From positions 248,001 to 312,000 of the forward strand of contig JBLDXI010000029.1 of assembly GCA_047495785.1 (NCBI GenBank): 64,000 bases of DNA, given 5' to 3'. A program made the translations under genes and the position numbers. This DNA comes from Lepidodermella squamata (lineage: Eukaryota > Animalia > Gastrotricha). The notes below the pieces were generated by a model that had not been told where the DNA came from, ran no database searches, and saw only the letters and a list, made by a program, of their open reading frames with translations. Position 1 is the stretch's first letter. Each line of letters opens with the position of its first letter. Below are positions 1,051-58,945 of this stretch, in pieces.

Positions 1051-2668
1051 TTAGTTTCCGCAAATACTAGGGAAATTCCCAGCGCATCCCGTTTTATCGG
1101 CGCCACGATCTATCAGCATTTGCGCTGTGCTAATCTGACCATAACGAACTGCATACAGCAACGCAGTCCAACCGTTGTTCGGGTTCTTAGCATCGATATT
1201 CGATCCGCGATCCAGCAGGAGCATAGCAATCTCGGTGTTGCCTTTATAACTCGCTGTCATCAGGGGTGTCATGCCCTGGCCATCGGAAGTGTCTGGTTGC
1301 GCGCCTTTATCAAGCAGTAGCCGCACTGATTCGAGCCATTTAGTGCCATTTGACACGCCGGATGCAAGGTGAAGGGGGGTGAAGTCACCGGTTGGAGTTC
1401 GCGACTGAACGCCCACTTGAGCATCGAGTAAGTATCGAATTGTGACGTAATGACCATCAACACAAGCCTGCCACAATTCCTGATATTCAAATTATGAATC
1501 TCTAAGAGAATTGACTAGAAAGGTAACTAACACCGGCGTTGATTCTACCACTATCTGGTGGAACCGCTATGGTTCCGCAAGACTGCTCGTCTGATGAATC
1601 GCCGCAATCGTCGGCTTCGTCGCATTGCCGGCTGTAAGCGATACAAAGGCCAGACTTCGGACTTCCATCTGGGCATGTGAACGATTGACACCCAGGCGTT
1701 GTGTTAACAGCTTGCGTTGTAGCAACTGTGGTGGTCCTGGTAGTTGTGGGAATAACAGCTGGACGGGTAAAAGTAAATCGAACAGTCGATCGAGTTGAAC
1801 TGCTAACAACATCTTGAAAAGGGGCTTTAACGTAGAAATTCAACCCGAAGTGCTGAACTTACTAACTACAGCTTGGCGTTGGCACAAGCCAGCCTGAGTC
1901 CAAGTCCCATCGCTGCGGCAGAAAACGTTCGGCTGCCCGACTAATTGAAAGCCGTCATTACAAGTAATCGCCCTAGTCAATCCGTTTGTTCCGGCCACTT
2001 CAGCGCTGGCTCCATTCGAGATTGTTGGCAGGGTCTGGCACGCTAGACAACAATTAAAATTATGTTCTTCCCGTGCGTTGACCAGTGAGAGGTTAACAGC
2101 AATGAGTGCGAAACTCTTGGCAACGAGCCAAAAAGTATATTTCCAACGCTCCACGTTCACATTATTCAATTATCCGACAGATGATGGGGAATACATAATA
2201 ATTAATGTAATTATTCTTGGGAATGATAATCTTACTCGATGTTCGACTGCAGGTCCCAGGCTGGGTCCACTGGCCAGTCGATTGAACGCAGGTGATTCTA
2301 GGCAGTCCACTCAGCCTTGCCCCAGGGTTGCACTTCAAATCCCTGGTAACACCCCACCCGTTGTCTGTGCCTTCGAAATAGCCATTGGCGACAAAAGGCG
2401 GCGGTCCACACCCGCCCTCGACTTTTAGCTCGCAGGTGCCAGGCTGGGTCCAGCGGCCATTGCAGCAGAAAATCGCATTGACGCCTTTGATCTGATAGCC
2501 AGTGCGACATTGAACCAGCCGGAGGACCCCAGTGTTGACTGGGCCCATGTAATAGTCGCCATTCGTAAGCTGAGGCAGCGCCCCGCAGTTATATAGCCCA
2601 TCGCTAGTTGTCTGTGCCTCTACAACGGCGATGTTCAGCGATATGATAATAGCAGCAAGCAACAACAT
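1051..2668 (-). CDS. Gene A: secreted 3xCCP(sushi) - Thr-rich linker - LDLa - ankyrin-repeat protein
   Basis: Hand-spliced exons 2668-2236, 2043-1863, 1812-1532, 1479-1051 with GT-AG junctions. Signal peptide MLLLAAIIISLNIAVVEA; CCP motifs C..P...NG...C..Gy.l.G.....C...G.WTQPG.C; LDLa CIAYSRQCDEADDCGDSSDEQSC; ANK motifs TPLH/TPLM/TALL; ends DKTGCAGNFPSICGN. Confidence 0.85.
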
Positions 2669-3232
2669 TCTTCCAGAAAATTAAAGACTTCTGTTCCCTT
2701 TGAGCTAATATCATTCAGCTTTTATCAATAGGATGGGCCACAAAGAGGCATAAAGTGGCACTTCAATAGGTAGACGTATTGTAACATTTTTTTATCCTTT
2801 TCAGACCCTAATTCGGATTACTCAAGCTTTCAACCTATCTTAGCCTTCAACCCAATTAAAATATTGCAAAAAATGGAAAGGAGATCAAAAGAAATATTTA
2901 CTCATACGGCAAATTTGGGTTTTTGGAGTCGTTATTCCGAAGATCGCAGCTGTTGTATCCATCAACACCGCGTGCTTTTCAAAGTTAGCTGGGCAGCGAT
3001 TTTCAGCAGGACTCTTGAGAAATTATTATTGAATGCAAATCAAGGTTAAATTGCTAGGGGCTATGAAGATGGTGCTTCAACTGAGTCAGCACTCATGGCG
3101 CGTGGACCAAAAATGGCGCATAGCTCGACCGTTTTCCAAAGCTCAGGTTTTTATTAATCTCAAAAACAGTTGGTTTCGAGATAATACAAAGGTGATTCGA
3201 ATTCCACTTTGAATTATATACACGTGAAAGTG

Positions 3233-6200: not shown

Positions 6201-6969
6201 TGATCTGAACAAGGAATTGGCACAGGCCTGCATGGACGGCGAAGTGGCGAAGGTGCGACAACTCGTAGCCGATATCGACTCTGCGACGCGAGGCAAATTC
6301 GACCCGAACATGCGATATCGGCGCAAAATCTCAGCTTGCGAATGGGAAGTGAAAAACGGAACGTTGTTGCACCTGGTTACTCAGTGCGGTAACAAGCCGG
6401 AGGATCGGTTCGAAATCGTCCGCCTGCTGGTCGATCGAGGCGCGCATGTCAGTTACGATGAAAACATGTTCGCTCACATGCCTTTGCACTTGGCGGCGGG
6501 AAACGGGCTTTTGAAGGTTGTTCGACTGTTGATCGTGAAAGGAGCGGCAATCGACTGCAAAACGACTGACCTTCGGACTCCGCTGATGTTTGCTGCCGAA
6601 AAGGGACACTTCGAAGTCGTGAAATTGCTGCTCGATCGCGGTGCTGATATTGATAGCCGGAGCGACAAGGCGCTTACAGCTCTTTTGCCAGCGGTGGCCA
6701 ACGGCCACGCAGAAGTTGCAAAGCTACTTCTGAATCGCGGCGCAGACCCCAATGTTGCTAGCACCAGTTCAGGGAAAACGCCGCTAGACTGGGCTGTTGA
6801 GCAGAAGCAAAAAGATTTAGTCGCACTGCTTAAAACCAACGGCGGAAAATGTAAGAAAAATGCGTGCCAAGGTGCAATGGAAGCTCCGAATTCCTGTTTT
6901 AATTTGTCAATTTCACCTTCTCTTACTGATTCTGAATCATTCATTCAACCTTCAACGCAACAGTTGTAA
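3233..6969 (+). CDS. Gene B: secreted prepro - 2xC-type lectin - ankyrin-repeat protein
   Basis: Exons 3233-3303 (MKSVLRAITVAMLIALVTCA, phase 2), 4733-4889 (pro-region ...IISKR/AYEK), 4941-5480 (CTL, WVGL, EPT), 5627-6130 (CTL, WIGM, EPN), 6184-6969 (ANK). AATAAA near 7018. The 3' end after CKKNAC is less certain. Confidence 0.85.
3311..4349. mobile_element. Non-autonomous DNA transposon (TA-flanked, CCGT termini, Tc1/mariner-pogo-like) in intron 1 of gene B
   Basis: TA|CCGTAAATTGGGGCAAAATG ... CATTTTGCCCCAAATGACGG|TA: 20-bp TIR with 2 mismatches and TA on both sides. Subterminal GGGGCAAA/TTTTGCCCC and GGGGCTAATTGGCCA repeats. No transposase ORF. Confidence 0.8.
3453..3953. repeat. ~175-bp near-perfect inverted repeat inside the transposon; each arm carries a tRNA-like Pol III unit
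   Basis: Arms ~3453-3627 and ~3780-3953 are reverse complements. A-box TGGTCGAGTGG at 3518-3528, B-box GGTTCGAATCC at 3571-3581, oligo-T at 3595-3601. Confidence 0.9.
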
Positions 6970-7767: not shown

Positions 7768-9754
7768 ATGATTAGGCTTGCAGTATTACTAACCTTTGCT
7801 GCGTTTTGTTCCACTTCAACTGGGCATAACTCTCCAAACAGAAATTTGTGAGTGCTCAACTGTTTCAGTCGCAACATGCAATCCTAATTAAGCTTTTCAT
7901 AATGATGTAAATTTGAAAATTTCTCGTTTGACAGGTATCGAAAATATGGCGAAGATATTCCCGGGCCACGCTTCGATTCAGCACGCTTCGGGGTCAATCG
8001 ATTTTCATCTAAAATTACAACTGAAATGTTGATTGGTGCTGGAAAACCAAGATTGTCTCGGATGAACAGCGGGCAAATTTCTCCTCGGGAGGCAGAGGCT
8101 AATACACCGCGGAAGATGAAACGCCGTGATGTTAGTGCAGACGAATTTGTATCCGCTGCTGGTGAACAGGTAAGGTTCTTGTCCTCGTAATGGCTTTTAA
8201 CTACGCTGATTCATGCGCAACAAAATCAGGTTTCTATAGCAACAAAATTATATATGCTTTGATAACCTTGCATAACACTGCATTCTATCTCATAGGTGGC
8301 GTACCAGCGATGCGTTGCATCCAATGGGAATGTTTTCTGTCATCCAGAGGCTGCCGATTGCGGCGATCTTTCAAGTGCTCTCCCCGGATCTTACCCTAGC
8401 AAACAGGCGTGCCTCACAGCTAAAAAGCGGTTCTTCGTTATTCGGCAAACGCCTGACTTGCGTCTGAATTGGGAAATAGCTGACGCTCTTTGCATGATCG
8501 AATCTGGAGTTTTGGCCTCTATCGTGACGCCTGAAGAACAGGCTGAACTTCGAAAACTTCTCGCCGCTGAGTCAATCATTTCCGCTTGGGTCGGTTTCTC
8601 GAAGGACGCGACGCAGAACTTCCGCTGGGGCGATGGTACGGCGTATGAGCCCTTCGTCGATCAGTGGGGCCCAAATGAGCCGAACGGCGCTGGTAATTGC
8701 GGCTCTTACAGCATATTCCCGGCTAGGGGCGACAAGCCGATGGGTCTCTACCTCAATGACGTTGATTGCAATGCAGCTATCGGAGCGGCAGTGTGCCAGA
8801 CTTATATATTGGAACCGAGACCTACACCGAAAATGGTAATCACATAAGCTGCCCTATTTAAGAGAAGTTTCTATGAAACTCGTATCAAACTTGAAATTTG
8901 ATTGACAAGGGTCTTATCGATTCTTAACAGTATTCTTATCATCTTTAGGTCGAAGCCCAAATCGTTAATCAGCCCATCGATGAAGTTGCTGCCAGCGGGG
9001 ACAAGGTACAATTAAAGTACATGGACAATTTACCTTTCAGCATTCATCAATTAAGCTTAATAAGCTGTTAATGAAAAACAACTGTTTTACGTTTCAGGCC
9101 GCAGACACTGCAGTTAATCAGCGTCTCGGTGAAGCTGTGGTCAGTGGTAATGTTGAAGAAGTTCGACGTCTCTTAGCCTCTCCGGATGTCGACGTAAAAT
9201 GGCGCGACAACCGCACTCTTGACAACGGAGCAGTGGTCGGTGGAACGGCGCTGCACAGAGCCGTGGCCAACTCAGCCCCGGTCGAAATCGTGAAGGCTCT
9301 CATTGAGGCAGGCTTCGATGTCAACGACGAAGAGCCAGCCAACGGTTGCATGCCCTTGCACTTGTCTGCTTCTCAGAAGACGAACGAAACAATGCTTTTA
9401 CTAATCAAATCAGGCGCAGTAGTCGACGCTGTTTGTCGAGGAAACGAAAAGACAGCGCTCATCTTGGCGGTACGTGCTGGTAGGCTGGATATGGTGAGGG
9501 CTCTTCTTAACCGTGGCGCAGAAATCGACAAGGCTACGACTACCAAAGGCTATTCAGCATTGCACTATGCGGCGAAGGAAGGCACTCTAAGCGTTGTCAA
9601 GGAGCTAGTTCGCCGCGGAGCTAACATCAACTTGAGGTCGAAGAAAAACAAGACACCACTAATGATGGCGGTTAAATATGGCCACCGATCAATTGCAACC
9701 TACCTCGTCAGCCGTGGTGCAGATGAAACGGGCTGTACGGACGATGCATGTTGA
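7768..9754 (+). CDS. Gene C: secreted prepro - C-type lectin - ankyrin-repeat protein
   Basis: Exons 7768-7847 (MIRLAVLLTFAAFCSTSTG, phase 2), 7935-8169 (pro-region ...RKMKRR/DVS), 8296-8835 (CTL, EPN), ~8949-9005 (linker), 9098-9754 (ANK, ends DETGCTDDAC*). Confidence 0.85.
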
Positions 9755-10561: not shown

Positions 10562-12876
10562 ATGAAGACCGGAAAATTCGCTCGAAGAGCAATTCAATTC
10601 GCCTTGTTATTTGGTGTGTTGTCGCGTGAACTCGCGGCGTCAAGTCAGCATGAGTGAGCTATTTACCTTGGCGAGATATTGCTTATTCTGCTCTTCTTTT
10701 ATTTTAATCAGCGATCAGCACAGCGAACATTCCCTCCACAACCCGTCTCATTCCGAGACTTCTGCAACCCAAGAGCAACCTATCAATGGCCCAAAGTTGA
10801 GCGACACAGCGGTTCGTGACACTGACTGAGATTTACAAATCATTTTTCCATCATTTTTCACAGGTCAATTCAAAGCAACGCCGAGATGTCAGCAATCCAA
10901 AATCGACAGGGACGAGAGCTGCTGGGACGGTATCAAATCAACCAATTGAGTGATCTTTTCTTAAATTCGCAATTTTAGACTGCCTTCACGCGATGCTTGG
11001 ACAAAGATGGCTTCCCTTACTGTGCATCTGTTGCTATTGGTTGCAACTTGCGAGCTTTTCCGGCAGGTTACTCGTATCCGACCAAGCAAGCTTGCCTAAC
11101 GGCTAAGAAGCGACTTTTCACGGTGAAAGCGGATGATCGGCGGCTGACCTGGTTTGAAGCTAATGCCCTCTGCACTGGTCAATCTGGCCACCTGGTAACC
11201 GTCAAAACAGCTACGGAGCAAACCAATTTTCGTAAACTCCTCGCCTCTGAATCGATCCCTTATGCATGGGTTGGACTCCGGAAAGACGCTACCAATAAAT
11301 TCGCCTGGACTGACGGAACGCCATTTGAAGCTTTCGACATGCAATGGGGGCCTCCCGAGCCGAACGGGGACGGAGAATGCGCAGATTACATCTCTTACAA
11401 AGCTAAGGAGGGATACCCTGCGGGACTTTACTTGAATGATTTAGATTGTCTTGTCCCGGCAGCAGCTGGCGTTTGCGAGACGTTCATGCCCCGCAGTCCG
11501 ATGTCCAACAAGGTAAAGAAAATTCAGATCTGTGTCATCTACAATATGTCATTTCCGACTTCGTTGTTCCCTTTTTAGAAAGGCTATCTACGATGCGTAG
11601 CGATACTCAACAAAGGCGAGGTCACGTGTCGGCTTGCTTCCGATGGCTGCAATGAGGACGAGCAAGCAAATCCTCCTCGCTACGCCTATGCTTCTCGAAT
11701 CTCATGCGAAACTGCGCCGAAATATATGTTTGTCGTCGAACTGCCCAAGGCTTTGACGTGGCACGATGCTAGCAGCATTTGCGCAGGGAAGTCGGGTCAG
11801 CTAGCTACGATCAAAACCGAAGCGGACCACGCCGCGCTGATGGATTTGATACCGGCCGGCTCGAACCAGTTCTACTGGGTCGGCCTGACGATGGACGCGA
11901 CGCGGAAGTTTACTTGGGTCGACGGTGCGCCCTTCACGCCTTTCGATAAGCAATGGGCGCACAACCAGCCGAGTGGTGATGGCGAGTGTGCAAACTACAT
12001 TCCTTTCGACGAACAGAGAGGCTATCCGGCTGGCTTTTACCTGAACGATGCAGCGTGCTCTGCCTATGCCTACTGGGCAGTCTGCGAAAGCTACGTCCCC
12101 GTGAGTTTTCAGCGCATTACATTTTATTCAGTACGAAGTGAATCTCCCAGTCTCCTTTCAATATTTTCAAAACAATTCCTGTATTTTTATTCTCCCTCTA
12201 GTAACATGTCCATTAATGTCAATTTCAAGCAGAGTTTCTAAAGTCTAAAGAAATATTCTTTTTTGTTCTGCTTGTGAACGCTTAGTCGCCGAATGCTGCA
12301 CTTGCGATGTACAAACAGTTGGGGCATGCGTGCGCTGACGCCGATTTATCAAAGGTTGTGGAACTCGTCGATGATATCGAAACGGCATCCGGCGGAAAAT
12401 TCGACCCGGAATGGCGTGACCCAGCCGAGTACAGCTCAGATAGTTGCTATGGAAAAGTTCTCAATGGCACGTTGTTGCACCGCGTCGCCCATTGCAAAGG
12501 CAACGAAGACCAGCGCATAGAAATCGCCAACTTGCTGCTAGATCATGACGCGAACATCAACAGCAAAGAAAAAACCTGGGGCTACACGGCCTTGTACCTG
12601 GCTACGGCTAATAACATGGTGGAACTGGCGCAGCTGTTGGTCCTGAGGGGAGCAGAGGTTGACAGTAAATTGAGCGACGGCTGGACGCCTTTGTTTGGCG
12701 CGGCGTTAAATGGCCACGCCGCAGTCGCCCGTCTGTTACTGGATCATGGTGCAGAAATCAACGTAGTTGGCGACGATGGCAACACGCCACTCGACTACGC
12801 AGTTCGTTCCAATCATGCCGAGGTCACTAAGCTGCTCAAATCTCGTGGTGGTCAGTGCCGCGCGCTAGAGTGCTGA
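10562..12876 (+). CDS. Gene D: secreted prepro - 2xC-type lectin - ankyrin-repeat protein (paralog of B)
   Basis: Exons 10562-10653 (MKTGKFARRAIQFALLFGVLS.., phase 2), ~10712-10811, 10864-10929 (KQRR/DVS), ~10979-11512 (CTL, EPN), ~11579-12100 (CTL, QPS), ~12286-12876 (ANK, ends GGQCRALEC*). Confidence 0.85.
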
Positions 12877-13665: not shown

Positions 13666-16600
13666 TCAGCAAGACTCCTTCTTGCATTCACCGCCGCGAG
13701 ACTTAAGCAATTTGATGACCTCGCCTTGCTTGTAGTATACAGCATAGTCCGATGGCGTGTAGCCATCGTCGCCAGCTTCGTTGATGTCAGCGCCGCGGTC
13801 CAGCAACAGCCGAGCGACTTCCAAATTTCCGTGTATAGCCGCAGTCGTCAGGGGCCTCCAGCCGTCGCTCAATTTGCTGTCAACGGCCGCTCCTCGTTTG
13901 ATCAGCAAACGCACGACCTCCAACAAGTTGTTTCCGGAGGCGAGGTACAATGGCGTGTAGCCCCATGTGCTTTCTCTACTGTCAACCTCCGCGCCGCGTT
14001 CAAGCAACAGGCGAACAATTTCCAACCGCTTGTATTCGTTGCCGTAGCATTGGGCCACTCTGTGCAGAATTGTACCGTTGCGAACTTTGCCGTAACAACT
14101 GCTGTACTCGGCCGGGTCACGCCAGTCCGGATCGAATTTTCCGCGAGCTGCCTTATCGATTTGGCTCACAAGTCTTCGCACTCCAGCAGAGTCAGCGTCA
14201 GCAGCTGCCTGGCCCAAGCGCGTGTAAAGAGGCAGCAAACTGCTTTTAGCCGGGGAGATCTGCAATGAAAATTGAAGATATTTAAGAAAGGTAAATTCTA
14301 TGAACCAGACAATCTATATAATCTTCCGAAAATTAGCTTCACCTACCGTGGTCAACAATTTGGCGATTTCGCCGAAACCCCTGCTTTTAGCAAAATCTAA
14401 AGCAGTTTCGCCCGTTGACTTTCTGATGTTGACATCAGCTCCGCGTGCTAACAGCATTTCCACCACATCCTTACGACCACTGTAGGCGGCCTCAATCAGC
14501 GGCGTTGCGCCATCAGAGCCTCTAGCATTGATTGAAGCTCCAGCGGCTATCAAAGCATCAAGAATGTCAGCATTGGCTGCGTAGGCTGCTTTGTGCACGG
14601 CCGTGACGCCGTCTTTGTCGCGCCATTTGAAGTCGAGCGAGCCTTGCTGCAGCAAACGCTTGACAGTGTCAAGATCATCGCGGCCAGCAGCTTCGTTTAA
14701 CTGCCGCTGTACGACAACTGTCGGCATGCGGGCTGTAGATGTAGGCCTCGTTACGATTAGCGTGGAGGAGACTCCCTAAGATAACATAAACGATTAAGTA
14801 TTTCAACGTTTTGGACCTTTGGAATTGAAATTTGTTGAGAGTCACGCCTATAACCCATTTTTGGCAAGCTCAATGGCCTATAACACAAATACAAAAGTTG
14901 GAAAAACGAGTCGCAGCGGTTGGCCGAAAATCGTTTGATAGGGTTATTATCTTAATTATCTGTTCAACAGGAAATTTCAAAATTTTTTATTCACACAAGT
15001 TCATGATTCCCAAAAATTTGAGCTTTAGCATTGTTTTAGTTTTGCATACCTCAGCGCCGGAGAGGATCTGGATGATATTATTGAAACCTTTTTGCCTTGC
15101 GATGCTGATAGCGCTTCTCGCACCAACCGTCACCGATTTATCCGCTCCCCTCTCAACGAGTAGCTCAACGACCGCCACGTGCCCATATTCAACTGCAATC
15201 ATGAGTGGTGTCATGCCGTCCAGCCGCTGAGAATTCATCTCGGCTCCATGATCTAACAACGCAGCGACTACTACAGGTTGTCCGGCAAAGGCGGCCTTGT
15301 GCAGAGCGGTGGATCCGGTTGCATCACGCCATTTCAAGTCCAGACGTTCATCTTCAAGCAGCCGTAGTACATCTTCGTAGTTGACTCGAACAACGGCATC
15401 GTTCAATGCTTGTTGACGCATGATCTTTTCCAAGTCCAAAGCCCGAGCAGTGGTCGCAGGAGTTTCTGTTGTTGCGATGATCGTGAAAAGCTGGATAAAA
15501 TCAATATTATTTCCAGCCAGGGAACCAGCTGTTTGACCATCGTCAGCAACTACCCGGGAATCAGCTCCGTTCTGGATCAAATACTTGGCGATTTCAAGGT
15601 GAGCATTTTTCGCAGCTAGCATCAGAGCAGTGTAACCATCCTGAGCCATAGCATTGATATCAGCGTCGTATTCGACCAGAGCCTTAACGTTAGCCAACCG
15701 GCCATATTCAGCTGCTGCCATTAAAGCGGTTTTTCCATTGGCTTCGTCGCGGCCATTGACATTCGCGCCAGATTCGATGAGGTATTCAACGATTTCAGAG
15801 GAGCTAGTTTTCGCAGCGGCGATTTCCAGAACTCTTGAACCATACTTAGTCTCCTTGGTATTTAAATTGGCACCGGCTTCCACGAGAGTTTTGACCAATT
15901 CTAGAGGAGCCTCAAGGTCCAAGGCAATGTGAAGGGCCGTTCCATTGACGATAGTCCAAGTGCCACGCTCTGATGAATCACGCCAATTAACGTCGACATC
16001 TCTATCCTCTAGTAGCTCGCGAACTTTGACGATATTCTGCTCTGTGATCGCTTTCATGAATTCCACTTGCTTGGCAACCAAATCCTTAACAAGATCATGC
16101 GAATGAGGATGAGTTTTAGACGTTGGTTACCTTTTGGTTACAGTTGCTGATATCTGGATACCACGTTGAGTTATCAAAGCAAGTTGAGCCGAGCGGACCA
16201 TTTGTGCATTCGTAGCCTTTGTTGCATTTCAGATAGATCGATGTGAATGGCGAAACAGCTGGGCCTTTGAGAACTTGGCCAGTATGAAGATCCAGCAGAA
16301 CACCGTTGGAAACCTCTGGTACCAGACATGAGCCTATTCAAGAACAAAATACATATAAGACCTCGAAGGATCTAATTCAGCTGTGAGCAGCCTTCATCAA
16401 CAATATTGCTGGTCAAATGAAATGCGTATGATTATTTTAGAATTTCCGTGTTATCGTTTTTTGAAACCGAAGAGCTGTTACCTCTGGGGCTGCAAATTCC
16501 AGGCTTTGACCAGCTGCCGTTGTTCGAGCATGCAACGAAGTCAGCTCCATGCAGTTCGTAGCCATCGTTACAGGAAACTGCGACGATGCTTCCCGGGGTG

Positions 16601-44184: not shown

Positions 44185-44267
44185 ACTAGGTTTTTCTTCA
44201 TTTGAATTTCAACAAGCTATTGAAAATTCATCGCATAATCTTCACATTCAGTATTTATCTTCACACA

Positions 44268-44936: not shown

Positions 44937-47900
44937 TCAACCAACAATTTGCGTGTTCAAGTGCTGGCGGATCACATTCGCGACATCGTAACGGTTCGCC
45001 GCGACAGCCAAATCCAAAGCCGTTAGCCCGCCTCGATTCCGCAGTGAGGTGTTAGCAAGATTGTCCAGCAGCACCTTCACAGTAGCGAGATGGCCTGCTC
45101 GAGCGGCGTAGTGTAGCGCTGTTTCCGATTCGAAATCGGCCACATTGACAAAGGCTCTGCCTTCGATGAGCCGGCGGACGTTCTCAGTCAGCCCCAAACG
45201 AGCAGCCTGCATTAGGGCAACTCGGCCAACTCCACCCGGCTCCCTAGCGTTGACATCAACCCCTCGCTCCAGAAGCAACTGAACTGTATTTGGGTTGTCT
45301 CTTGCAGCGGCTAGATCCAGAGGTCGAACGCCAAAGTTGCCTTCAAGAGCGCTGACGTTAGCCCCGGAGTCTATCAGTAGTTTAACGAGTTCTGTCGGGC
45401 AGGTGTTGATGACAGCCCGATGCAAAGCGGTGGCGTTGCGGATGGGCCAGTTGTCAGTTTGACGAGCGTCTCGCCAGTCGATGCTGACGCGGCGTGAAGC
45501 GATGAGACGGCGCACTTCCGGAGTATCGCATACAGCCGCTGCTTCGCCGAGGCGTTGATTGAGGAGAACAGCTGGTAGCTATCAAAATTAATAAAATTTT
45601 GAAACAGTATTTTAGATTTTAGCCCTATATTTATCGAGCTGAACCTTAAGCTAGTGTACATAGCAATTTTCATGCCAGAACTGCAAGACTGAGCACACTT
45701 TTTTAAGCGCTGATTTAAACGCTGAGGATTGTACTTGCATATAGTTCACAAGGTTCGATGACAATAAAAAGCTAGAATACCCTTTTCATTTTAGTGACAG
45801 TATGACTTTTCGTGATCTATTTACAAGTTATGGCTAAGTTAGAAATTCCAGAGAAAACTCACCGTGTAAAGCTCGAGCAGATTAACCAATGAAGTTTTCT
45901 TCTGACTTTTAGCCAAATCCATCGCTGTTTTTCCAGTCCTAAGCTTCGCATTCGCATTCGCACCACGCTCGAGCAGCACTTTCGCCGCAGATTCGGAACC
46001 CTTGTAAGCCGCTATCATCAACGGCGTGACGCCCTGATTGTTTTTCGCATCTATAACTGCTCCATGATCAAGCAGCGACTGAACAACGTCAGCTCTGTCT
46101 TCCGTCGCAGCGAAATGTAGCGCCGTAGCACCGCCTTTGCTCATTTCCTCGAGTTTTGCGCCCTTGCTCAGCAAAAGTTTGACATTCTCAATGAGTCCTT
46201 GACTTGCAGCCCACATTAAAGCCGTACTCTCGTCTTTCCTGTTTAATTTAGCGTCAACCAAGGCGCCTCTGTCCAACAAGAGCCGAACCGTTGCTGGGTT
46301 AGACCTCGAAGCAGCAAGAATCAAAGGCGTTGCTCCAATTTTCAATTCGCTGGCGTTGATATCCGCGCCATGGTCGAGGAGAAGAGCGATTACTTCTGTT
46401 GGCGCAGTGTTTGCGACGGCTCGGTGGAGCGCTGTCGCATTTTGCAGGGTGCCGTTGTCGGTCACGAGCTGGTTGGCCCAGTTGACATCGGTGAGCTTGC
46501 TGCCTAAAAGACGGCGAACTTCGGCGACGTCGCCCTTAGCGGCCGCTTCGTTTAGAAGCTCGCTATTCAGCAAAATTGTAGCCGAATTCTGCCCCTGAAA
46601 GATACACAACATTAACAAGACCATTTTCATTTTGTTCATCGATCCGCTAGGCAGTTCCCCGTTCCCCCGAAAATCTGGCATAGCACTTTTAGCCAATGCC
46701 CTACTTTATGAAGAAATCAGTTCCAGTTGTAAATTGCTCATCCGCTGGAATGTTTTAGTTTGGCTCGTTTCACCATGCTAATTCTTAATTCTAACCATAA
46801 TACTAAGCCTGATTCTGCAATTTGAATACATCGGGTCTTTTTAACTGGAACGGGAATTTAAACTGGGCCAAATTGTTAATTACTGCCCGAATCGATTTTT
46901 ACGTTAAATGCCAAAGTTGGAAATCAAAAATGGAACAAAAATGCTACTAACTGCTTATCCATCCTATAAGCTTTCAAAATTACCTTGAAATCATCGACAG
47001 ACGGTACTGAGCCCATTGCGGTGGGACCAATTGCTTCGTTCGATGAATCGGTGACGGCTGAGCTTGTCTTTACCTGCTTCACACATTTACCAACACTTGG
47101 ATGCCACGTTGAGCCGATGCGGCAAACAGAACCTGAAGATCCAGCCGCAATTTGATAGTCATCATTGCATTTAACAAGCAAGGCTGAGTAGGTCGGCGTA
47201 AAATCGCTCGTGATCACTTTGCCATCAAAAGGATTAATTGCAACTCCATTTTCGATATTAGGAACAGCGCATTTTCCATCTAGTAAAGTTAATACAAATA
47301 ATTTAATCTGAAAGGGGAAGAGCGTTATTCATGCCTCCGTTTGTGGCCAATTTGAGGTGGTAGTTCAGGCTAGCGACTTCGATGGCGCTCATGCCTTGGG
47401 GATCCAACAGCGTCAGATTTGCCCCTGAGTTGCTAAGAGCCTTAACACAGTCCGCTTTTGCTGAGTAAGCCGAGAAATGGAGTAAAGGCCCCGATTTCGA
47501 AGCATCAGCCAAATCGTAGTGGCATAGTGCCGTATTAACAATAGCTCTCACATCTTTTCTGAGGCTTAGCAGCTGTCTCAGAAATTCGCAATTGCCTTTT
47601 CGAATCGCATAGCACATCGGCGTTTCGTTGTTTTCATCCAAAGCTGTTGCGTCGAACCTCAGAATTGTCAATGGATTGGCAAGAATCGCCAGCATATTCT
47701 GTTCAGCAATTACGTGCCAAGTTGTCTTCACTCCACGCTTCACAGTTCGGTCGAGATCTGCAACTTCGTTTTTCGACGGTGATTTTTCGATGAAAAGATC
47801 GATGAGTTTTTGATTGCCACTTTCAACCGCGGCTTGAAACGGGTGCTTATCGTTCAAGTCTCTCGCGTTCAGATCAGCTCCTGATTCGAGCAATTTTCGA

Positions 47901-49305: not shown

Positions 49306-51935
49306 TCAGAGTAAGAGATTGACTATGTCTTCATGGCCAGCTTCTCGAGCCAGGTCCAACGCAGACTTTCCGTCCAGCTTGTGGATCGCTGTGTCAGCCT
49401 TCCGCTCCAGAAGCAGCTTCACAACATCGGTGGCGCCGTAGTAGGCCGCCGACATCAACGGAGTCACGCCTTGGTAGCCTCGCAGATTGATATCAGCGTT
49501 AGCATCCAGAAGAGCAGCTACAATTGCCGCATGGTTGCCTAGAGAAGCACGGTGAAGTGCGCCCATGCCGCTGGCGTCTCTCCAGTCCATGTCCAGGTTA
49601 CCTAGGCTGATCAGAGATTGAACCTCAGCGAGATCGCCATGGCTAGCAGCTGTCGCCAATTGGTGTTGCTTGGCGATAATTTCAGCGTTATCCTCTTCAG
49701 TCTTCACAGGAGCTTCATCGTTCTGAATTTCAACCTCAGGCTCCACTTGCGAGTCCACGTTAGCCATTTTCAAATTGCCAGGCAAATCGCTCGTAGTGAC
49801 ATCGCTAGCTCTCTCGCCAGCGGCGTTGTTCGTCGCCGCATCACCCGAAGCTCTTTCAACCAGCAGTTTCACAACATCGCCAGCTCCAATCTTCATCTCG
49901 TGCACAGCGTCGAACAGCGCATTCACGATGCTCGGCTTTCGGCTCAAAATCGCCTTGTCGATAGCCATGAAGGCGAATTTGTCGCGCTGTGCGAAATCTT
50001 GATTGCCGGGCGCCAGCAGACGGTCAGCGCCGTCCAACGTATCACTCGCTGCTGCGATCAGCGTCTGCGCGTTGTTACAGGTACTGCTGGGTGCGTCTTC
50101 AACGCGCGATCCACGCAACACAACTTTCGGTTCTTCCTCGGCTGCGTCGCTGAGAACCTTGAGAACACAATTCAAATTATCAATTGACATGCGACTTAAA
50201 GTTAGAGCGAAGCAATGCAATATTCAGTGCTAACACCTAACTGAAACCCAGAGGTCCTAGATTTCTTACCGGCATATCAGCGTATTTGTGGAGCAAAGCC
50301 GCAAGCTCAGTCTGTTCGTGCCGCTCGGCGAAACTGATTAGCAGATCGATGGACAGCGAGCTGAGAGCTCCTCGTTCCAGCAGCGTCTTACACACGTCAA
50401 TCGCGACGTAGAACACAGCTTCGTCGAGGGCGGTCGTGCCGTCAGGGCGCCGCAAGTTGATCTGAGCACCGGCATCCAGCAGAGCCGCGACTACGCCGGC
50501 GTTCTTACTAGTAACCGCCTTGTGAAGGGCTGTCATGCCGAGTGAATTTCGCCAGTTGACGTTCAGGCTGCCTGTGGAAAGCAGGTGCTTCACTGCGAAC
50601 AGGTCGCCGCGCTCTGAGGCAAGAACCAATTGCTCCTGAGGGGTTGGTGGCGGAGGCGGCGGTTGCGTTGTTGTGGGAGGCGCCTCAGTCGTGACCTGTT
50701 GAAAAAAATCAAAGCCATAAGAGATTAACGAGCGCCTATGAAATAGAAAATGCAGGAAACCTAGAAAAATCCGGAATACAATCACTACCTCACGAATACA
50801 GCAAATTGAATTTGCCAACAGTGACCTAAAGTGGTATGAGCGGTTTTTACGGAACTTACCATGTAAGCTTCGAGGAGACCAACCAGGCCTATATCGTAAC
50901 CCCGTCGGACTCGGGACTGCGCCTTCAATAACGCTGTCTCCCCATTGTTGGCCACGGCAAACGCATCGGCGCCCTTGTTCGTAAGAACCCAAGCGGCGCC
51001 CAAGCCGTCGTTCGAACTAGCAGCCATCAGTGGCGTCTCGCCATTCGAATCTCGCGCGTTCAAGTCAGCCCCAGCATCGATGAGAAGCTGAACGCCCTCG
51101 ACGTGATTCGCCTCAGCGGCGTAGTGCAGAGCCGTCCGACCCGCGTCGCTCTGCTCTTCGATTCCAGCCTTCCGATCAATGAGAAGCTTCATCACGAGGG
51201 CGTTCTTGTTGGCTGCAGCGATCATAAGAGCAGTTTCGCCTTTTTCTGTGGATCTCGAGTCCAAGTAAGCTCCGTAGGTCGCCAGAAGCTCCGCAACCTC
51301 GTAATTGCCCAGCGAAACAGCGACTTGTAGTGGCGTGAGGCCTTTTAGCGAATCGCGTGACTCAATATCAGCTCCAGCGTCCAGAAGGCACTTGACCAGC
51401 CTCGGCGGGGCGTTGTTGATGACCGCTCTTAGGAGAGCTGTCGCGCCTTTCAGCTGGCCGTTGTCGGTTACGCTTTCATCGCGCCAGTTGACGTCGATTT
51501 GATTTGAAAACACAAGCCGGTGAACCTCGTCCGTGTTCTTGCTGGCTGCGGCTTCGCCAAGCTCGCGGCCCATCGCGTCAAAGTCGACGGGTCGAAGCTC
51601 TGATGGATCAAAGTTCATGGCGCTTTGAAGTAAGATTTGACCAGTGGGCTTCGATTGCCTGGAAAAAGAGCAACCTGCATTATTCCATTTTAAATATAGC
51701 CCACCCCTCGTGAATTGTATACAAAGAAATTCCTAAACATTGAATAGTTATCACTATCCGCACTCATTAAATCTACTTTTTTGCGAATAATTAAAAATTT
51801 CAACGTAAAGTTGATTAATTGAAAATAAGAATTGACTTACCCGCCACCGCATTCTGTTGAAGATCGAATTAATAAAACAAGCACGACATAAAGTTGAAGC
51901 CTCGCTCCACTGATAAGGCACTGCACCGCTCCCAT
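49306..51935 (-). CDS. Gene L: secreted ankyrin-only protein with Pro/Thr linker and one degenerate cassette
   Basis: Signal exon 51935-51841 (MGAVQCLISGARLQLYVVLVLLIRSSTEC, phase 2). ANK exons 51658-50860, ~50696-50271 (VTTEAPPTTTQPPPPPP), ~50157-49306. Confidence 0.8.
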
Positions 51936-53277: not shown

Positions 53278-56200
53278 ATGACATTTCTACGATGGACCTT
53301 ACGCTTGAAGCTAGCTTTCCTGTTCATGGCGATACCCGATTGCGTCGTTTTAGCGAATGGCTCGAAAACGTAAGTGAATAAAATATATAATTCGCTTGCC
53401 AACGTTAGCCAACTTGGGAAAATGAAGATTGTTTCTCTAGAATCATCGCTTATTTCGAATGTTATTTTCTCTAGTGGGAAAATTCATGTTGAGGCTGGTG
53501 AGCACTCGCTGGCTTCGTCTTACGACTACGAATCTCTGGCGGCGAAACTTGTCACCAATGAGCCATCACGTGAGCAGGGTCAAAACAGGCTGAATAAACT
53601 CTACAATCAGCACATTCGCTACGACGTATTATCGGCAATCAAACGAGATTACCCCAATGTAAACGATTTGAAGATTGTTACAAACGCATCTGGCCATACA
53701 CCCCTTCATGTAGCAGCATTTTACAGCGCTTTGAAGACAGCTACATTTCTCGTCGATGAAGTTGGTGCCGATATCGAGGCTCGTAACAATCTTGGCGAGC
53801 AGCCAATTCACCTCGCCGCTTCAAATGGCCACCTCAAAATCATCGATTTCCTACTCGAGAAATCTGGCGACGATAAGAAGAAGCAATTTGTGAATGCCGA
53901 AACTTTGAATGGCGAAACACCTTTGCTCTACGCTGTAAAATCTCGTTCGACTCGTGCTGTTGACGTTGCGAAAAGACTTTTAGACCGAGGAGCTGATTCG
54001 AACGTCAGAGACCGCAGTGGCAGCTTTGCTTTCGAAATCGCCCTGGCAAGCAAGAACCAAGCGATGATTAAGCTGTTCTTCCCGGACGAGTCAATGTCAA
54101 GATCGAAGCAGAACGTGAAAACAACGTCGCACGTCATTGCTGAAGAGAACAAAATCGATCATTTGCTGAATAATTTTACAAAACAGTTTTTCAAGGCTGC
54201 CGCTTTGGATGAACATGGCGAGACGCCGCTATGTTACGCGATACGTAAAGGCAACTGCAACTTTTTACGGCTTTTGTTCTCAGTTCGGGAAGACACGAAA
54301 ACTTTGGCCACATCTGACACCTGTTTCTATTCGGCTGATAATCGCGATGTGAAGGCCAAGGGCGTCGTTGATCGGGGCCCACTGGTTCATCTTGCGAGTT
54401 TTCTGCGTAAAACGGAGTGTGCCAAGGTTTTGAAGGAGGCAGGGGCTGATCTTGCAGCTACTGATTCTAGAGGCCGAAATGCTGCGCATGCTATGGCTCT
54501 TCAATCCGATCAGACAATCGATAAACGTTAGTTGGATTCTCAATTTTTTTAAATTCGGCTAAAATACCATGACTTTGCTTGATCATAATTTATAAGTTCT
54601 GTTTGAACATCTTTTGGCATTTTAATCGAAAATTAACAGCTGATGTCGATGAAGAACTGATTAAAATCTTGCTCGACGAGCCGGCCGGTCTTTTCGATGG
54701 CCGCGATCATAACAACCGAACTGTGCTAGCCTTAGCCGCGGAGAAGAACACGCGAGCTTTCGTTGAGGTTCTGTTAAGAGATATCTTTTCGGAAAGCTTC
54801 AGCGACGAAGAACCGAGTAATCATGGCACGATCGCACTGCTTCACGCTATCGCTACACAGCAGGCTGAGATGGTCAAGCTGTTGCTGCCCTACAGGCGTG
54901 AAATTGCAATGTCATTGGATAGTCATGGCCGGTCTCCGTTGTTCAAAGCAGCTCGGTGCGGTGACTCTGGTTCGAAAACCATCGAAGCAATCCTGACACC
55001 CATTTCTTCCGACTCGGAGAAGCTCTCCAAGGCTTTGTCTCTGAAAGACTCGACCGGCAAAACATTGCTCATGCTGGCTGTCGATCGAGATTGCCCAGCT
55101 TTGGTCGACCTTCTTCTCAACAAATTTAACGCACCTTGCGAGGGAAGTTTTGGCAATGTTGGCATTTTCGATTGGGCTAGGCTAGCTGGGTATGAGCAAG
55201 TTTTTCAAGTTATGCAACAGTCTGGCCGGTGCGACAAACCTAATGTTAGCGTTACATCGCAGAGTTTGCGAAAATGTGTGCTAGATGAAGGCGATATGGC
55301 GCAATTCCAAAAATATCAAAGCAGTATGTTTCGAGAATCCATGAAAATTCAACTTTGAATTTTGCCTTTATTATGTATTATAGTTCAATCTTCTAAGCCG
55401 AAAAAAGTTTCCAATGGACTGATTGAATACTCCCCGAAGAGCGATGACAGCTGCTCTGATATCGGAACCATAACTTGTGACGCAGGATTTTCGCTGATTG
55501 GTCCAAGCTCGGTTAAGTATTCAATAGAAGATGGATCCTGGATGGTAGAGGGCCAATGCCTTGCGGCTTGTAGCGACGAGATTCCTTCAGTTCCCAACTC
55601 TGAGATGGCCGAGCCTGATAAGCCGTTTGTTCACGGCACAGTTGTTTCTTTCAAGTGCATGGAACCATTGGTCTTAGAAGGCCCTGCTGCTATCGTTTGC
55701 CAGAGGAATGGCACTTGGTCTCAGCCTGGCAGCTGTGTTGAATCTAATTTAGGTAGAAATTACTAGCTAAATCGAAATTTGATCTTGAATTGCTGAATTA
55801 CTATATAATATCAGACTGTGGCGAGGTTCCGGCAATTCCGAATGGTTTGGTTGATGATGGCTCAGTGACTACCCCGGGAAGCATAGTCGCAGTTTCCTGT
55901 AACGATGGCTACGAACTGCATGGAGCTGACTTCGTTGCATGCTCGAACAACGGCAGCTGGTCAAAGCCTGGAATCTGCAGCCCAAAAGGTAATAGCTCTC
56001 AAAGTTCGAAAAATGATCACACGAAAATTCTCAAGCGCTCATCAATTCCAATTGAGTCCCAGTATTTCGATTGAACCATGTGCAATTCTAAATTAGATAT
56101 TTTGAGGTCGACGAAAATTCTAGTAATTTATTCTTGAATAGGTTCATGTCTAGTTCCAGAGGTTTCGAACGGTGTTTTGCTGGACCTTCATACTGGCCAA

Positions 56201-58945
56201 GTTCTCAAAGGCCCAGCTGTTTCGCCATTCACATCTATTTACCTGAAATGCAACAGAGGCTACGAAAGCAAAAATGGTCCGCTCGGTTCAACCTGCTTTG
56301 ATAACTCAACGTGGTATCCAGATATCAACAGCTGTAACAAAAAGGTAAGTAACGTATGCGGCTCATCCTTATTTATCGTATGCCCTTGTTGTAGGATTTG
56401 GTTGCCAAGCAAACAGAGCTCATGAAAGCGATCACTGAGCAGAATATCGTCAAAGTTCGCGAGCTGCTAGAAGATAGAGATGTCAACGTAAATTGGCGTG
56501 ATCCATCAGAGCGTGGCACTTGGACTATCGTCAATGGAACGGCCCTTCACATTGCCTTGGACCTTGAAGCGCCTGTAGAACTGGTCAAAACTCTCGTCGA
56601 AGCCGGGGCTAATTTAAATGCTAAGGAGGGTAAATACGGCTCAAGAGTTCTCGAGATCGCCGCTGCGAAGACCAGCTCCCCTGAAATCGTTGCATACCTC
56701 ATCGAATCTGGGGCGAATGTCAATGGCCGTGACGAAGCTAATGAAAAAACCGCTTTGATGGCAGCAGCGGAATACGGCCACCTGGTTAAAGTAGACATTT
56801 TGGTCAAATACGGTGCTAACGTCAACGCTGTTGGTAAGGATGGTTACACGGCTCTGATGTTAGCGGTGAAGAAAGCTCACCTGGATATTGTCAAGTATTT
56901 GATCCAGAACGGAGCTGATTCCCTGATAGTGGCTGACGATGGTCAAACAGCTAGTTCCCTGGCTGGGAATAATATCGATTTTATCCAGCTTTTTACGGGT
57001 ATTTCGACAACAGAAACTCCCACGACCACTAATCGGGTATTGGACTTGGAGAAAGTCATGCGTCAACAAGCATTGAACGATGCCGCTGTTCGGGCCAGCT
57101 ATGATGAAGTGCTGCGATTGCTTGAAGGTGAAACTCTGGACCTGGAATGGCGCGATGCTACCGGATCTACTGCTCTCCACAAGGCTGTTTTTGCTGGACA
57201 GCCTGTCGTAGTAGCTGCGTTGTTGGACCACGGAGCCGAGATGAATTCTCAGCGGCTGGACGGCAAGACGCCCCTGATAATAGCAGCTGAATATGGCCAC
57301 GTGATGGTCGTGGAACTGCTCGTTAAGAAAGGAGCGGACAAGTCCGTCGCGGTTAGTGGGAACCGTGCTGTCGACATCGCCAGGCAAAAGGGTTTCACGG
57401 ATATTGTACGCATTCTTTCTGGGAACAGGGTATGCTTTAACCAATAACAGACAGCTTGAGACAGCTGAGACATAGGTATTCTTTAGAAGAGTTTTGAATT
57501 TTTTAGAAGAATTCAAATTCCTGTCAGGTTATTTTTATTGGATTCTTCATCCTTCGAAAATTACACATTTTCATTTAATATCAATACTTTCATCAATACT
57601 ACTTCAATAATTCCCAAAATATTTAATAATTGAAGTAATAAATGAATTGAACTTGTAGATCGCCTATCTCTCGACAATCGCCACTAAGCCCACCTCTACA
57701 ACTCGCACGCCAACGGTTGTGTTGCAGCGGCAATTGAACGAAGCGGCAGGCCGCGGCGATCTTGACACTGTTGGCCGCTTGTTGGAGCAAGGATCACTTG
57801 ATTTAAATTGGCGTGATCAAAACGGCGTCACAGCGGTGCATAGAGCAGCCTACACAGCGAATGCTGACATTCTCGATGCTCTCATTGCCGCTGGAGCTTC
57901 GATCAATGCGAGGGGCTCAGATGGTGCTACGCCGCTGATTGAAGCTGCTTACAGCGGCCGTGGTGACGTCGTGAAAATGCTGCTTGCTCGTGGCGCTGAT
58001 GGCAAAATCAGAAAATCGACTGGTGAAACAGCTCTGGATTTCGCGAGAAGCAAGGGATTCAGTGAAATAATCAAACTGTTGGCTCCGGTAGGTGAAACTT
58101 GGATAGTTAATATTTTAAATTCAATAAAGGATAATCGAAAGCCACTTAGATTTATATGTTAACCCTATTCGGAAAATTCGGCATGGCGATTTCACGAGAG
58201 TCTATAAGGCACAACATGTCAACGTTTTATAATGGAAACTGGACTTTTATGATGAGTTGTAGGTTGATTATTTCATGTCTCTCTCTAGGCTGGCGATCCG
58301 GAAGTCAACAGGCGTCTCGGCGAAGCCGCTGCCAGGGGCAACTCGACTAGAGTTCAGGAGCTACTCCAGACTCAAGGTATCGACCCGAAATGGCGCGACA
58401 ATCGTGTTCTCGACAACGGCAATGTCACGGGTGGAACCGCGCTTCATCGCGCCGTAGTGAACGCAGCTCCGCTCAGCATTGTGAAGGCCTTGGTTAAAGC
58501 CCGATTCAACGTGAACGAAGCTGAACTAGGCAACGGCTGCATGCCACTGCACCTGGCTGTCAGCCAGAGAACAACTAGCACATTGCTGTACCTGATTGAG
58601 ATTGGCGCAGATGTCGATGCTGTATGTTCGAAACCCGGAATAACGGCACTTATGATAGCAGCGTATAATGGAAGATCGGATATGGCCACAGCCTTACTCG
58701 ATAAATCTGCTGAAGTCGATAAGGTTTCGACGAAGGAAGGCTACACGGCTTTGCACTATGCGGCTGAGAAAGGCCAGCTGGGCGTCGTGAAGTTACTGCT
58801 GCGTCGCTCTGCGAATATTAACGCGAGATCGAGGTACAACGAGACTCCGCTCATGAGAGCTGCCGCGAATGGGCAGGCGGCTGTTGCGCGTTTCCTTATC
58901 AGGATGCAAGCCGATAAAACAGGCTGTGTTAGCAAGTACTGCTGA
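53278..58945 (+). CDS. Gene N: large secreted ANK - ANK - 4xCCP - multi-ANK protein (inverted paralog of E)
   Basis: Signal exon 53278-53369 (MTFLRWTLRLKLAFLFMAIPDCVVLA, phase 2). Exons ~53475-54526, 54640-55324, 55384-55751, 55815-55988, 56142-56344, 56395-57429, 57659-58087, 58289-58945 (ends DKTGCVSKYC*). AATAAA near 59025. Confidence 0.85.

What the first reader, a model, noticed from the sequence alone, without database searches (positions are those of the whole stretch)
1051..58945. Conserved C-terminal Cys-pair cap and Cys-substituted ankyrin repeats suggest adaptation to the extracellular space
Seen: eight of ten genes have two Cys right after the last repeat, at or near the C-terminus: A DKTGCAGNFPSICGN*, B GGKCKKNAC.., C DETGCTDDAC*, D GGQCRALEC*, E GGECKKESC*, H DKQDCAGLYPEICGP*, I NATGCAWEPCFSG*, N DKTGCVSKYC*. 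Internal cassettes also have conserved Cys sets: LCYAIRKGNC...C in E/I/K/N, ARC...DC...APC...C in E/I/N, and GCMPLH...AVC in C/N. Inference: these are disulfides stabilising ankyrin stacks outside the cell, which is independent support for secretion. K and L lack the cap.
Basis: partly seen in the sequence, partly recalled or inferred. Interest (0 to 1): 0.75.

Follow-up and report, generated by a model that had tools for sequence, protein, structure and literature searches.

The report
Cysteine-pair tail on secreted ankyrin proteins
Eight of ten neighbouring ankyrin-repeat genes of an unidentified small animal end in two conserved cysteines four or seven residues apart, on proteins that also carry export signals and extracellular lectin, sushi or LDL-receptor modules, so the tail most likely forms a small disulfide loop at the end of an ankyrin domain working outside the cell, although the bond could not be measured.

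Summary
All eight C-terminal motifs are at the stated places. Seven are followed by a stop within 0-3 codons. In B the stop is replaced and 33 more codons follow.

- **Spacing and register:** the spacing is Cx4C in six genes and Cx7C in two, in two different registers.
- **Background:** the tail is absent from generic ankyrin proteins: 0 of 109 with a terminal repeat have it, against 8 of 10 here.
- **Internal sets:** each internal cysteine set has four invariant cysteines. Outside the conserved sets, cysteine is depleted to 0.30%, against 1.00% in generic ankyrin proteins.
- **Extracellular setting:** this rests on other evidence. There are signal-peptide exons, Pfam-confirmed C-type lectin, sushi and LDLa modules in the same genes, no membrane span, and an LDLa motif completed on the ankyrin exon of H.

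Two cysteines 4-7 residues apart can close a terminal loop but cannot staple the repeat stack. AlphaFold2 gave the tails moderate confidence (pLDDT 66-76), and the tool returned no coordinates, so no S-S distance was measured. No RNA data cover these genes. Covalent multimerisation through the tail is a live rival.

The scan had already noted four-cysteine N-cap staples on ankyrin modules elsewhere in this genome. I rate this a new variant of a known kind, of moderate interest.

The parts
1054..1098 (-). Gene A tail, GADKTG-C-x7-C-GN-stop. Cys codons at 1084-1086 and 1060-1062. It ends a 4-repeat ankyrin exon (1054-1491) that follows SP, 3 sushi, a Thr-rich linker and LDLa.
6337..6867 (+). Gene B terminal ankyrin exon, type 1. 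N-cap Cys pair at 6337-6339 and 6385-6387. Tail GGK-C-x4-C at 6850-6852 and 6865-6867. The frame then continues for 33 codons to 6966 because the stop of D and E is CAA here.
9347..9751 (+). Gene C terminal ankyrin exon, type 2. Internal pair GC(MPLH) at 9347-9349 and (DAV)C at 9434-9436. Tail GADETG-C-x4-C-stop at 9734-9736 and 9749-9751.
12445..12873 (+). Gene D terminal ankyrin exon, type 1. N-cap pair at 12445-12447 and 12493-12495. Tail GGQ-C-x4-C-stop at 12856-12858 and 12871-12873.
13669..14097 (-). Gene E terminal ankyrin exon, type 1. N-cap pair at 14095-14097 and 14047-14049. Tail GGE-C-x4-C-stop at 13684-13686 and 13669-13671.
27731..28240 (-). Gene H terminal exon. Its first nine residues (VDGSDEFNC) complete the LDLa motif. 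An ankyrin module follows, then the tail GADKQD-C-x7-C-GP-stop (Cys at 27761-27763 and 27737-27739).
38208..38246 (+). Gene I tail, GANATG-C-x4-C-FSG-stop. Cys at 38220-38222 and 38235-38237.
58538..58942 (+). Gene N terminal ankyrin exon, type 2. Internal pair at 58538-58540 and 58625-58627. Tail QADKTG-C-x4-C-stop at 58925-58927 and 58940-58942.
18813..18992 (-). Cassette 1 four-Cys set of gene E: Cys in place of the His of TPLH, Cys at the start of helix 2, a loop Cys, and a Cys in helix 2 of the next repeat.
31637..31822 (+). Cassette 1 four-Cys set of gene I.
47447..47614 (-). Cassette 1 four-Cys set of gene K. This gene has no cap.
54232..54420 (+). Cassette 1 four-Cys set of gene N.
17223..17498 (-). 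Cassette 2 four-Cys set of gene E. A fifth Cys, shared with N only, lies between two alternative donors.
32715..32990 (+). Cassette 2 four-Cys set of gene I.
54957..55232 (+). Cassette 2 four-Cys set of gene N. The third Cys codon carries a synonymous TGC>TGT difference in the only public run that holds the locus.
44940..45578 (-). Terminal ankyrin exon of gene K. It ends after an ordinary C-capping repeat, with no Cys tail.
49309..50223 (-). Terminal ankyrin exon of gene L. It ends after an ordinary C-capping repeat, with no Cys tail.

Best explanation
The two terminal cysteines are a selected feature of the last ankyrin module of proteins made in the secretory pathway. Most likely they bond to each other, closing a 6-residue (Cx4C) or 9-residue (Cx7C) loop at the very C-terminus.

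In A, C, H, I and N the loop sits where the beta-turn of the next repeat would begin. The first Cys is at repeat position 33 and the second at position 5 of a repeat that is otherwise missing, so a stapled turn stub replaces the usual C-capping repeat. In B, D and E the loop follows a complete C-capping repeat.

Such a loop would hold down and protect the free end of the solenoid against fraying and exopeptidases. It would not brace the stack.

Shown: the motif, its conservation, its rarity elsewhere, its register, and the extracellular-type domain context. Inferred: secretion, oxidation of the pair, and the protective role.
For: - **Motif and termini:** (poly-A-like signals 5-130 nt downstream).
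- **Register:** from the alignment with uncapped paralogous modules and my own repeat HMM.
- **Conservation:** only the Cys are conserved within the tails. The intervening residues differ: KKNA / RALE / KKES, and TDDA / VSKY.
- **Both or neither:** eight genes have both Cys, two have neither, none has one.
- **Rarity:** absent from generic ankyrin proteins.
- **Cys depletion:** Cys outside conserved sets is 0.30% against 1.00% in generic ankyrin proteins, p 5e-10.
- **Secretory context:** signal-peptide-like first exons for all ten genes. Pfam Lectin_C, Sushi and Ldl_recept_a in the same genes. Phase-compatible short introns join them to the ankyrin exons, and the LDLa motif of H is completed on its ankyrin exon. 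There are Thr-rich linkers.
- **Genes under constraint:** 21 synonymous against 13 non-synonymous differences in gene N, p 4e-5, including TGC>TGT in a set Cys.
- **Chemistry (established knowledge):** Cx4C rings are sterically easy disulfides. Oxytocin and vasopressin are examples.
Against: - No S-S distance could be measured.
- AlphaFold2 models the tails as coil with pLDDT about 66 (N) and 76 (E).
- No RNA or protein data cover these genes. The one public run is DNA.
- The splice models are computational.
- A, B and D have an extra lone Cys in the N-cap helix, so not every Cys is paired.
- K, L and many internal modules do without any Cys.
- Paralogy means only about four independent module types.
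Confidence: 0.5

Rival explanations
1. The tail is a covalent multimerisation piece. One or both terminal Cys form disulfides with the tail of another chain, giving dimers or higher oligomers of lectin-ankyrin and sushi-ankyrin binders. The IgM/IgA tailpiece, the IgG hinge CPPC and the Cys-rich stalk of lamprey VLRB work this way.
For: - In four genes the Cys is the very last residue, and in all eight the pair lies in the last 3-15 residues.
- The pair occurs only at protein ends, never at the ends of internal modules that end in an ordinary cap.
- It appears in two different registers, which suggests selection for a terminal Cys pair rather than for one fold.
- AlphaFold2 leaves the tails flexible.
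- The partner domains are lectins and sushi modules, which commonly act multivalently (general knowledge).
Against: - One Cys would be enough for cross-linking, yet the spacing is strictly 4 or 7.
- There is no evidence of any oligomer.
- Nothing else in the tails looks like an assembly signal.
Confidence: 0.25
2. The tail Cys are not disulfide-bonded at all. They are free thiols or metal ligands, or one of them pairs with a Cys elsewhere in the protein, such as the lone N-cap Cys of A, B and D.
For: - Odd Cys counts in the ankyrin exons of A (3) and D (5).
- Tails are modelled with only moderate confidence.
Against: - The N-cap and the tail lie at opposite ends of a 4-5 repeat stack, so they cannot meet within one chain.
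- C, E, H, I and N have even counts without the N-cap Cys.
- Two free thiols on a secreted protein would be unusual, given the strong depletion of other Cys.
Confidence: 0.1
3. The proteins are cytosolic after all, the gene models are wrong, or the genes are dead. On that view the Cys tail is a lipidation or zinc motif, or a relic kept by recent duplication.
For: - No RNA evidence for these genes.
- The signal exons are predicted by a hydrophobicity rule only.
- The tail of I, CFSG, formally resembles a CaaX box.
Against: - The LDLa motif and the ankyrin repeats of H share one exon with no membrane span.
- Lectin_C, Sushi and LDLa are disulfide-dependent extracellular modules.
- The other seven tails fit no prenylation motif.
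- There is an excess of synonymous differences in gene N.
- Paralogues are only 37-63% identical, yet they keep the Cys.
Confidence: 0.07

Closest known systems
Cysteine-rich flanking caps of extracellular leucine-rich-repeat domains (LRRNT / LRRCT; for example Slit, Toll, GPIb-alpha, lamprey VLR, small proteoglycans). From general knowledge.
   Same: A solenoid repeat domain that works outside the cell ends in a short disulfide-bonded element. Intracellular versions of the same repeat lack it.
   Different: The repeat fold is different. LRRCT is a 40-60 residue module with two disulfides that covers the hydrophobic core. Here the tail has only 6-15 residues and one possible bond. There is no sequence relation.
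C-capping repeat of natural and designed ankyrin domains (DARPins)
   Same: Same fold. The N terminal exon model matches DARPin structures at TM 0.80-0.85. Caps seal the hydrophobic core and limit stability (PMC8683736). B, D and E keep a normal C-cap repeat before the Cys tail.
   Different: DARPins and the generic ankyrin proteins sampled have no terminal Cys pair. In A, C, H, I and N the C-cap repeat is missing, and a Cys-flanked turn stub stands in its place.
Four-cysteine N-cap staples on ankyrin modules elsewhere in this genome (scan notes s1-374062 and s1-374150)
   Same: Same genome and the same idea: conserved Cys pairs on predicted secreted ankyrin modules. The N-cap pair of B, D and E may be related.
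   Different: Those notes describe two bonds tying an N-terminal strap to repeats 1-2. This finding concerns a pair at the C-terminus. The notes are unchecked AI notes, and their bonds were also not measured.
C-terminal disulfide rings of peptides (oxytocin/vasopressin Cx4C ring; the 'Rana box' of frog antimicrobial peptides). From memory.
   Same: A terminal Cys-x4/5-Cys ring. The type 1 tails CKKNAC and CKKESC look superficially like Rana-box loops.
   Different: Those are small peptides, not caps of a repeat domain. This is a resemblance only and was not tested.
IgM/IgA tailpiece and the VLRB stalk. From general knowledge.
   Same: Cys within the last residues of a secreted binder.
   Different: Those Cys make inter-chain bonds and sit in longer conserved tail sequences. 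Nothing here shows oligomers.

Membership tests
Ankyrin repeat domain (Pfam Ank, Ank_2, Ank_4) | 33-residue helix-turn-helix repeats matching the Pfam models above their gathering scores | tested here: met
   All ten terminal or internal exons scanned score far above the cut-offs, for example Ank_2 at 71-165 bits against a cut-off of 27.3. My own HMM finds 140 repeats.
Ankyrin repeat domain (Pfam Ank, Ank_2, Ank_4) | Stacked solenoid fold | tested here: met
   AlphaFold2 gives pLDDT 92 and 91.6 with paired helices per repeat. Foldseek best matches are DARPins, gankyrin, FEM1 and AnkB at TM 0.8-0.85.
Secretory or extracellular protein | N-terminal signal peptide | tested here: inconclusive
   An ATG exon with a hydrophobic core lies upstream of each of the ten genes, with phase-compatible donors. 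No dedicated predictor and no RNA were available. The candidate for B lies 1.7 kb upstream.
Secretory or extracellular protein | Disulfide-dependent extracellular modules in the same polypeptide, with no membrane span before the ankyrin part | tested here: met
   Lectin_C is found in B, C and D; Sushi in A, E, H and N; Ldl_recept_a in A. The LDLa motif of H is completed on its ankyrin exon. The linkers are visibly non-hydrophobic. The joins rest on predicted splice sites, except in H.
Disulfide-bonded cap (the claim itself) | The two Cys lie within bonding distance and are oxidised | not testable with these tools
   Structure prediction returns no coordinates. The tails are coil with pLDDT 66-76. 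Only the sequence spacing (4 or 7 residues) and the conservation pattern argue for it.
LRRCT-type cysteine cap | Homology to the LRRCT or LRRNT modules | tested here: not met
   Pfam scans of the terminal exons return ankyrin families only. The comparison is an analogy of role, not membership.
Prenylation or GPI signal | A CaaX, CC or CXC end, or a hydrophobic C-terminal GPI signal | tested here: not met
   The tails end ...YC...AC...EC...SC...CGN...CGP. Only I (CFSG) fits CaaX formally. No hydrophobic tail follows.

The most novel reading that the evidence does not exclude
The Cys-pair tail is an assembly device. It cross-links secreted lectin-ankyrin and sushi-ankyrin proteins into covalent multimers, so this animal would make multivalent, ankyrin-based soluble binders. 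That would be a third repeat-protein answer to the antibody problem, beside immunoglobulins and lamprey LRR-based VLRs. The interchangeable terminal ankyrin cassettes would act as the variable heads.
Probability: 0.15. Interest if true: 0.85.

Novelty: new variant of a known kind. Interest (0 to 1): 0.55.

Why it matters
Ankyrin repeats are textbook intracellular modules, and engineered ones (DARPins) are valued because they need no disulfides. Here a natural family places ankyrin domains behind export signals, next to lectin, sushi and LDLa modules. It keeps cysteines only in conserved even sets and strips them elsewhere. That would show how a cytosolic fold is adapted to the oxidising extracellular space, much as extracellular LRR domains gained cysteine caps.

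The terminal Cx4C or Cx7C tail is a small, directly testable element. Its oxidation state and its effect on stability or oligomer state could be measured on a 150-220 residue recombinant module. If it proves useful, it could be copied onto designed ankyrin binders.

Tried and rejected
- **RNA evidence:** the one public run that holds the locus is DNA. It shows no joints and its contigs cover the introns. Splice sites and termini therefore remain predictions.
- **Relatives:**
  - A word-indexed protein search with the N terminal exon found only generic ankyrin proteins at or below 46% identity.
  - A profile search of 1.84 billion representatives was swamped by giant multi-repeat proteins. None of the top 150 has the module's N-cap motif.
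  - A metagenome scan gave 26 loci at or below 43% identity.
  - A family-wide covariation test across species was therefore impossible. These blanks do not prove absence of kin, because of length limits and the top-150 cut-off.
- **S-S distances:** two AlphaFold2 jobs ran, but the tool reports only pLDDT and secondary structure.
- **Literature:** four searches found no paper on natural extracellular or disulfide-capped ankyrin repeats. The library is partial.
- **Rejected readings:**
  - Prenylation or a GPI signal: the tails do not fit.
  - A Cys after modules E_3 and N_3: it is the GTATGC donor read through.
  - Gene I as two genes: no signal exon lies between its halves, and there are more ankyrin and sushi exons there.
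- **Spliced models:** joined protein models were not searched or folded. All searches and folds were done exon by exon, by reference.
Full report
**What the window is.** The 64 kb window is eukaryotic DNA with short GT-AG introns. It holds ten ankyrin-repeat genes, A, B, C, D, E, H, I, K, L and N, among a few unrelated genes. Pfam confirms ankyrin repeats in every exon tested. A repeat HMM that I built from the window finds 140 repeats in 29 ankyrin exons.

**The observation.** Exact six-frame matching finds all eight cap strings at the places given.
- The stop codon follows the second Cys directly in C, D, E and N, after two residues in A and H, and after three in I.
- In B the codon aligned with the TGA of D and E is CAA, and the frame runs on for 33 codons with one more Cys.
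- Poly-A-like signals lie 5-130 nt downstream of the stops.
- K and L end after an ordinary C-capping repeat.
- The spacing is Cx4C in B, C, D, E, I and N, and Cx7C in A and H.

**Register.** I aligned the terminal exons of N and C with five uncapped paralogous modules. Uncapped modules continue from G-A-N/D into a last, capping repeat. N and C stop after G/Q-A-D-x-T-G-C-x4-C instead. On the repeat numbering of my HMM (D1 ... T6 P7 L8 H9 ... G27 A28 D29 ... R33), the first Cys is position 33 and the second is position 5 of a repeat that is otherwise absent.
- These two residues flank the beta-turn. From memory, both are among the surface positions randomised in DARPin libraries. I did not verify this in the paper I read.
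- A, H and I share this register.
- B, D and E are different. They keep a full C-capping repeat (TP[LS]D[YW]A ... LLK) and then add G-G-x-C-x4-C.

The terminal pair therefore exists in two registers and on four module types. These types are distributed across different architectures. The collinear paralogues E and N even carry different terminal types.

**Internal sets.**
- Cassette 1 (E, I, K, N) has four invariant Cys. One replaces the His of TPLH (position 9), one is at position 17, one is in the following loop, and one is at position 19 of the next repeat.
- Cassette 2 (E, I, N) has four invariant Cys. A fifth, shared by E and N, lies between two candidate donors and may or may not be coding.
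- B, D and E share an N-cap pair.
- C and N share GC(MPLH) at position 5 and (DAV)C just after position 33 of the same repeat.

Twelve of 16 Cys columns are invariant among paralogues, against 27% of all columns (p 9e-5). Lone Cys exist: one in the N-cap helix of A, B and D, and single ones in B, K, L, I_6 and I_7. So not every Cys can be paired.

**Is it more than chance, and is it common elsewhere?**
- None of 120 generic ankyrin proteins of similar size has C-x(3-8)-C in its last 16 residues.
- Two of 150 giant ankyrin proteins do, but in a zinc-finger-like end and a hydrophobic end.
- Of 109 background proteins whose last repeat ends within 25 residues of the C-terminus, three have two or more Cys in the tail. 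None has a terminal Cx4C or Cx7C. The window has 8 of 10 (p about 1e-8 to 6e-11).
- Outside the conserved sets, Cys makes up 0.30% of 6,576 ankyrin-exon residues, against 1.00% in the generic set (p 5e-10). Seven of the 29 ankyrin exons have no Cys at all.

Cys that are either kept in conserved even sets or removed is the pattern expected of proteins that fold in an oxidising compartment.

**Context.**
- Each gene has an upstream ATG exon with a hydrophobic core. Examples are the exon at 53278 for N, the one contiguous with the first sushi in A at 2668, and the one at 29778 for H.
- Pfam finds Lectin_C in B (two), C (one) and D (two), Sushi in A, E, H and N, and Ldl_recept_a in A.
- Predicted introns of 50-260 bp join these exons in phase to the ankyrin exons.
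- In H the join needs no model beyond one 57-bp intron. The ankyrin exon itself begins with VDGSDEFNC, which completes the LDLa consensus. Twenty non-hydrophobic residues later the repeats start.
- Gene I also has sushi exons (33100-33821) and one more ankyrin exon (35452-36093).
- Thr-rich linkers join modules.
- N-x-S/T sites are denser than in generic ankyrin proteins (0.79 against 0.44 per 100 residues). One site just before the first ALH of many modules is conserved.
- Contigs of the single public run differ from gene N at 34 listed exon positions, 21 of them synonymous (p 4e-5). One is TGC>TGT in a cassette 2 Cys. The frames I use are therefore under purifying selection.

**Structure.** AlphaFold2 on the terminal exon of N (with six paralogous modules) gives pLDDT 92. 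On that of E (with B and D) it gives 91.6. Both are regular helix-pair stacks, and the N model matches DARPins at TM 0.80-0.85. The tails are coil, with mean pLDDT about 66 (N, residues 211-218) and 76 (E, residues 181-187). The tool returns no coordinates, so the decisive S-S distances were not obtained. Only exon-level sequences were folded or searched.

**Reading.** A pair only 4 or 7 residues apart can close a terminal ring. It cannot brace a 4-5 repeat stack.
- Most likely (about 0.5): an intramolecular ring that pins and protects the free end. It stands in for the missing C-cap in five genes and is added after the cap in three.
- Main rival (about 0.25): inter-chain bonding. The facts in its favour are that the pair is found only at protein ends, in two registers, often as the very last residue, and on proteins whose other modules are lectins.
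- Poor fits: free thiols or metal ligands, and a cytosolic reading.

**What is known.** I found no paper describing natural extracellular or disulfide-capped ankyrin repeats. I also found no relatives of these modules in the protein and metagenome collections. Each of those searches has limits, which are stated under Tried and rejected. The nearest analogy in role is the cysteine cap of extracellular LRR domains. Earlier notes of this scan report four-Cys N-cap staples on ankyrin modules on other DNA of this genome and a genome-wide family of signal-exon ankyrin genes. The present finding adds the C-terminal element to that picture rather than opening a new one.

**Verdict.** This is a new variant of a known kind. 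Interest is moderate, because the bond, the secretion and the expression are all still inferred.

Noticed in passing
window 6865-6969 (+), compared with 12871-12876 (+) and 13666-13671 (-): Gene B has lost the stop that ends D and E (CAA where they have TGA). It reads on for 33 codons with an extra Cys. An AAG|GTGCAA donor-like site sits at the same spot, so B may instead splice onward.
   Followed up: partly
E terminal exon 13669-14313 (-) and D terminal exon 12286-12873 (+); N terminal exon 58289-58942 (+) and C terminal exon 9098-9751 (+): E and N are collinear paralogues but carry different terminal modules. E's is 63% identical to that of its tail-to-tail neighbour D. N's is 56% identical to that of C. 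Terminal ankyrin cassettes seem to be exchanged between genes.
   Followed up: partly
for example 6330-6345 (B), 12438-12453 (D), 14041-14056 (E), and the first repeat of E_3, N_3, I_6, K_2 and K_t: A conserved N-G/A-T glycosylation site lies just before the first ALH of many modules. Overall sequon density is 0.79 per 100 residues, against 0.44 in generic ankyrin proteins.
   Followed up: partly
window 57430-57435 (+) and 15045-15050 (-): GTATGC splice donors read through as Val-Cys in the open frame. This creates apparent Cys after modules E_3 and N_3 that are not in the protein, a trap when counting Cys from raw ORFs.
   Followed up: yes
window 28244-29787 (-), gene H: The trypsin-like domain of H keeps TAAHC, but reads GKNGS where GDSGG is expected. 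The catalytic serine appears to be lost, making this a pseudo-protease fused to sushi, LDLa and ankyrin.
   Followed up: no
window 35184-35186 and 35286-35288 (+), module I_5: Two Cys sit at surface positions 13 and 14 of consecutive repeats in an otherwise Cys-free run of small modules. They may form another inter-repeat pair.
   Followed up: no
window 43971-44339 (+): A cluster of three tRNA genes (Phe-GAA, Pro-CGG, Glu-TTC) lies between genes I and K.
   Followed up: no
window 20689-21624 (-), 22259-23593 (-), 62000-63937 (-): The non-ankyrin neighbours are a weak GH17-like ORF with a signal-like start, a 444-residue ORF with a weak PQQ/beta-propeller match, and a Laminin_G_3 plus trypsin ORF.
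   Followed up: no
window 33100-33821 and 35452-36093 (+): Gene I contains sushi exons and one more ankyrin exon that were not in the first list of ankyrin ORFs. Its architecture therefore matches E and N.
   Followed up: partly
window 53200-59100: The only public run holding this locus differs at about 98 positions over 5.9 kb and has an 8-base deletion at 59038. The source is a second haplotype or a different strain.
   Followed up: partly
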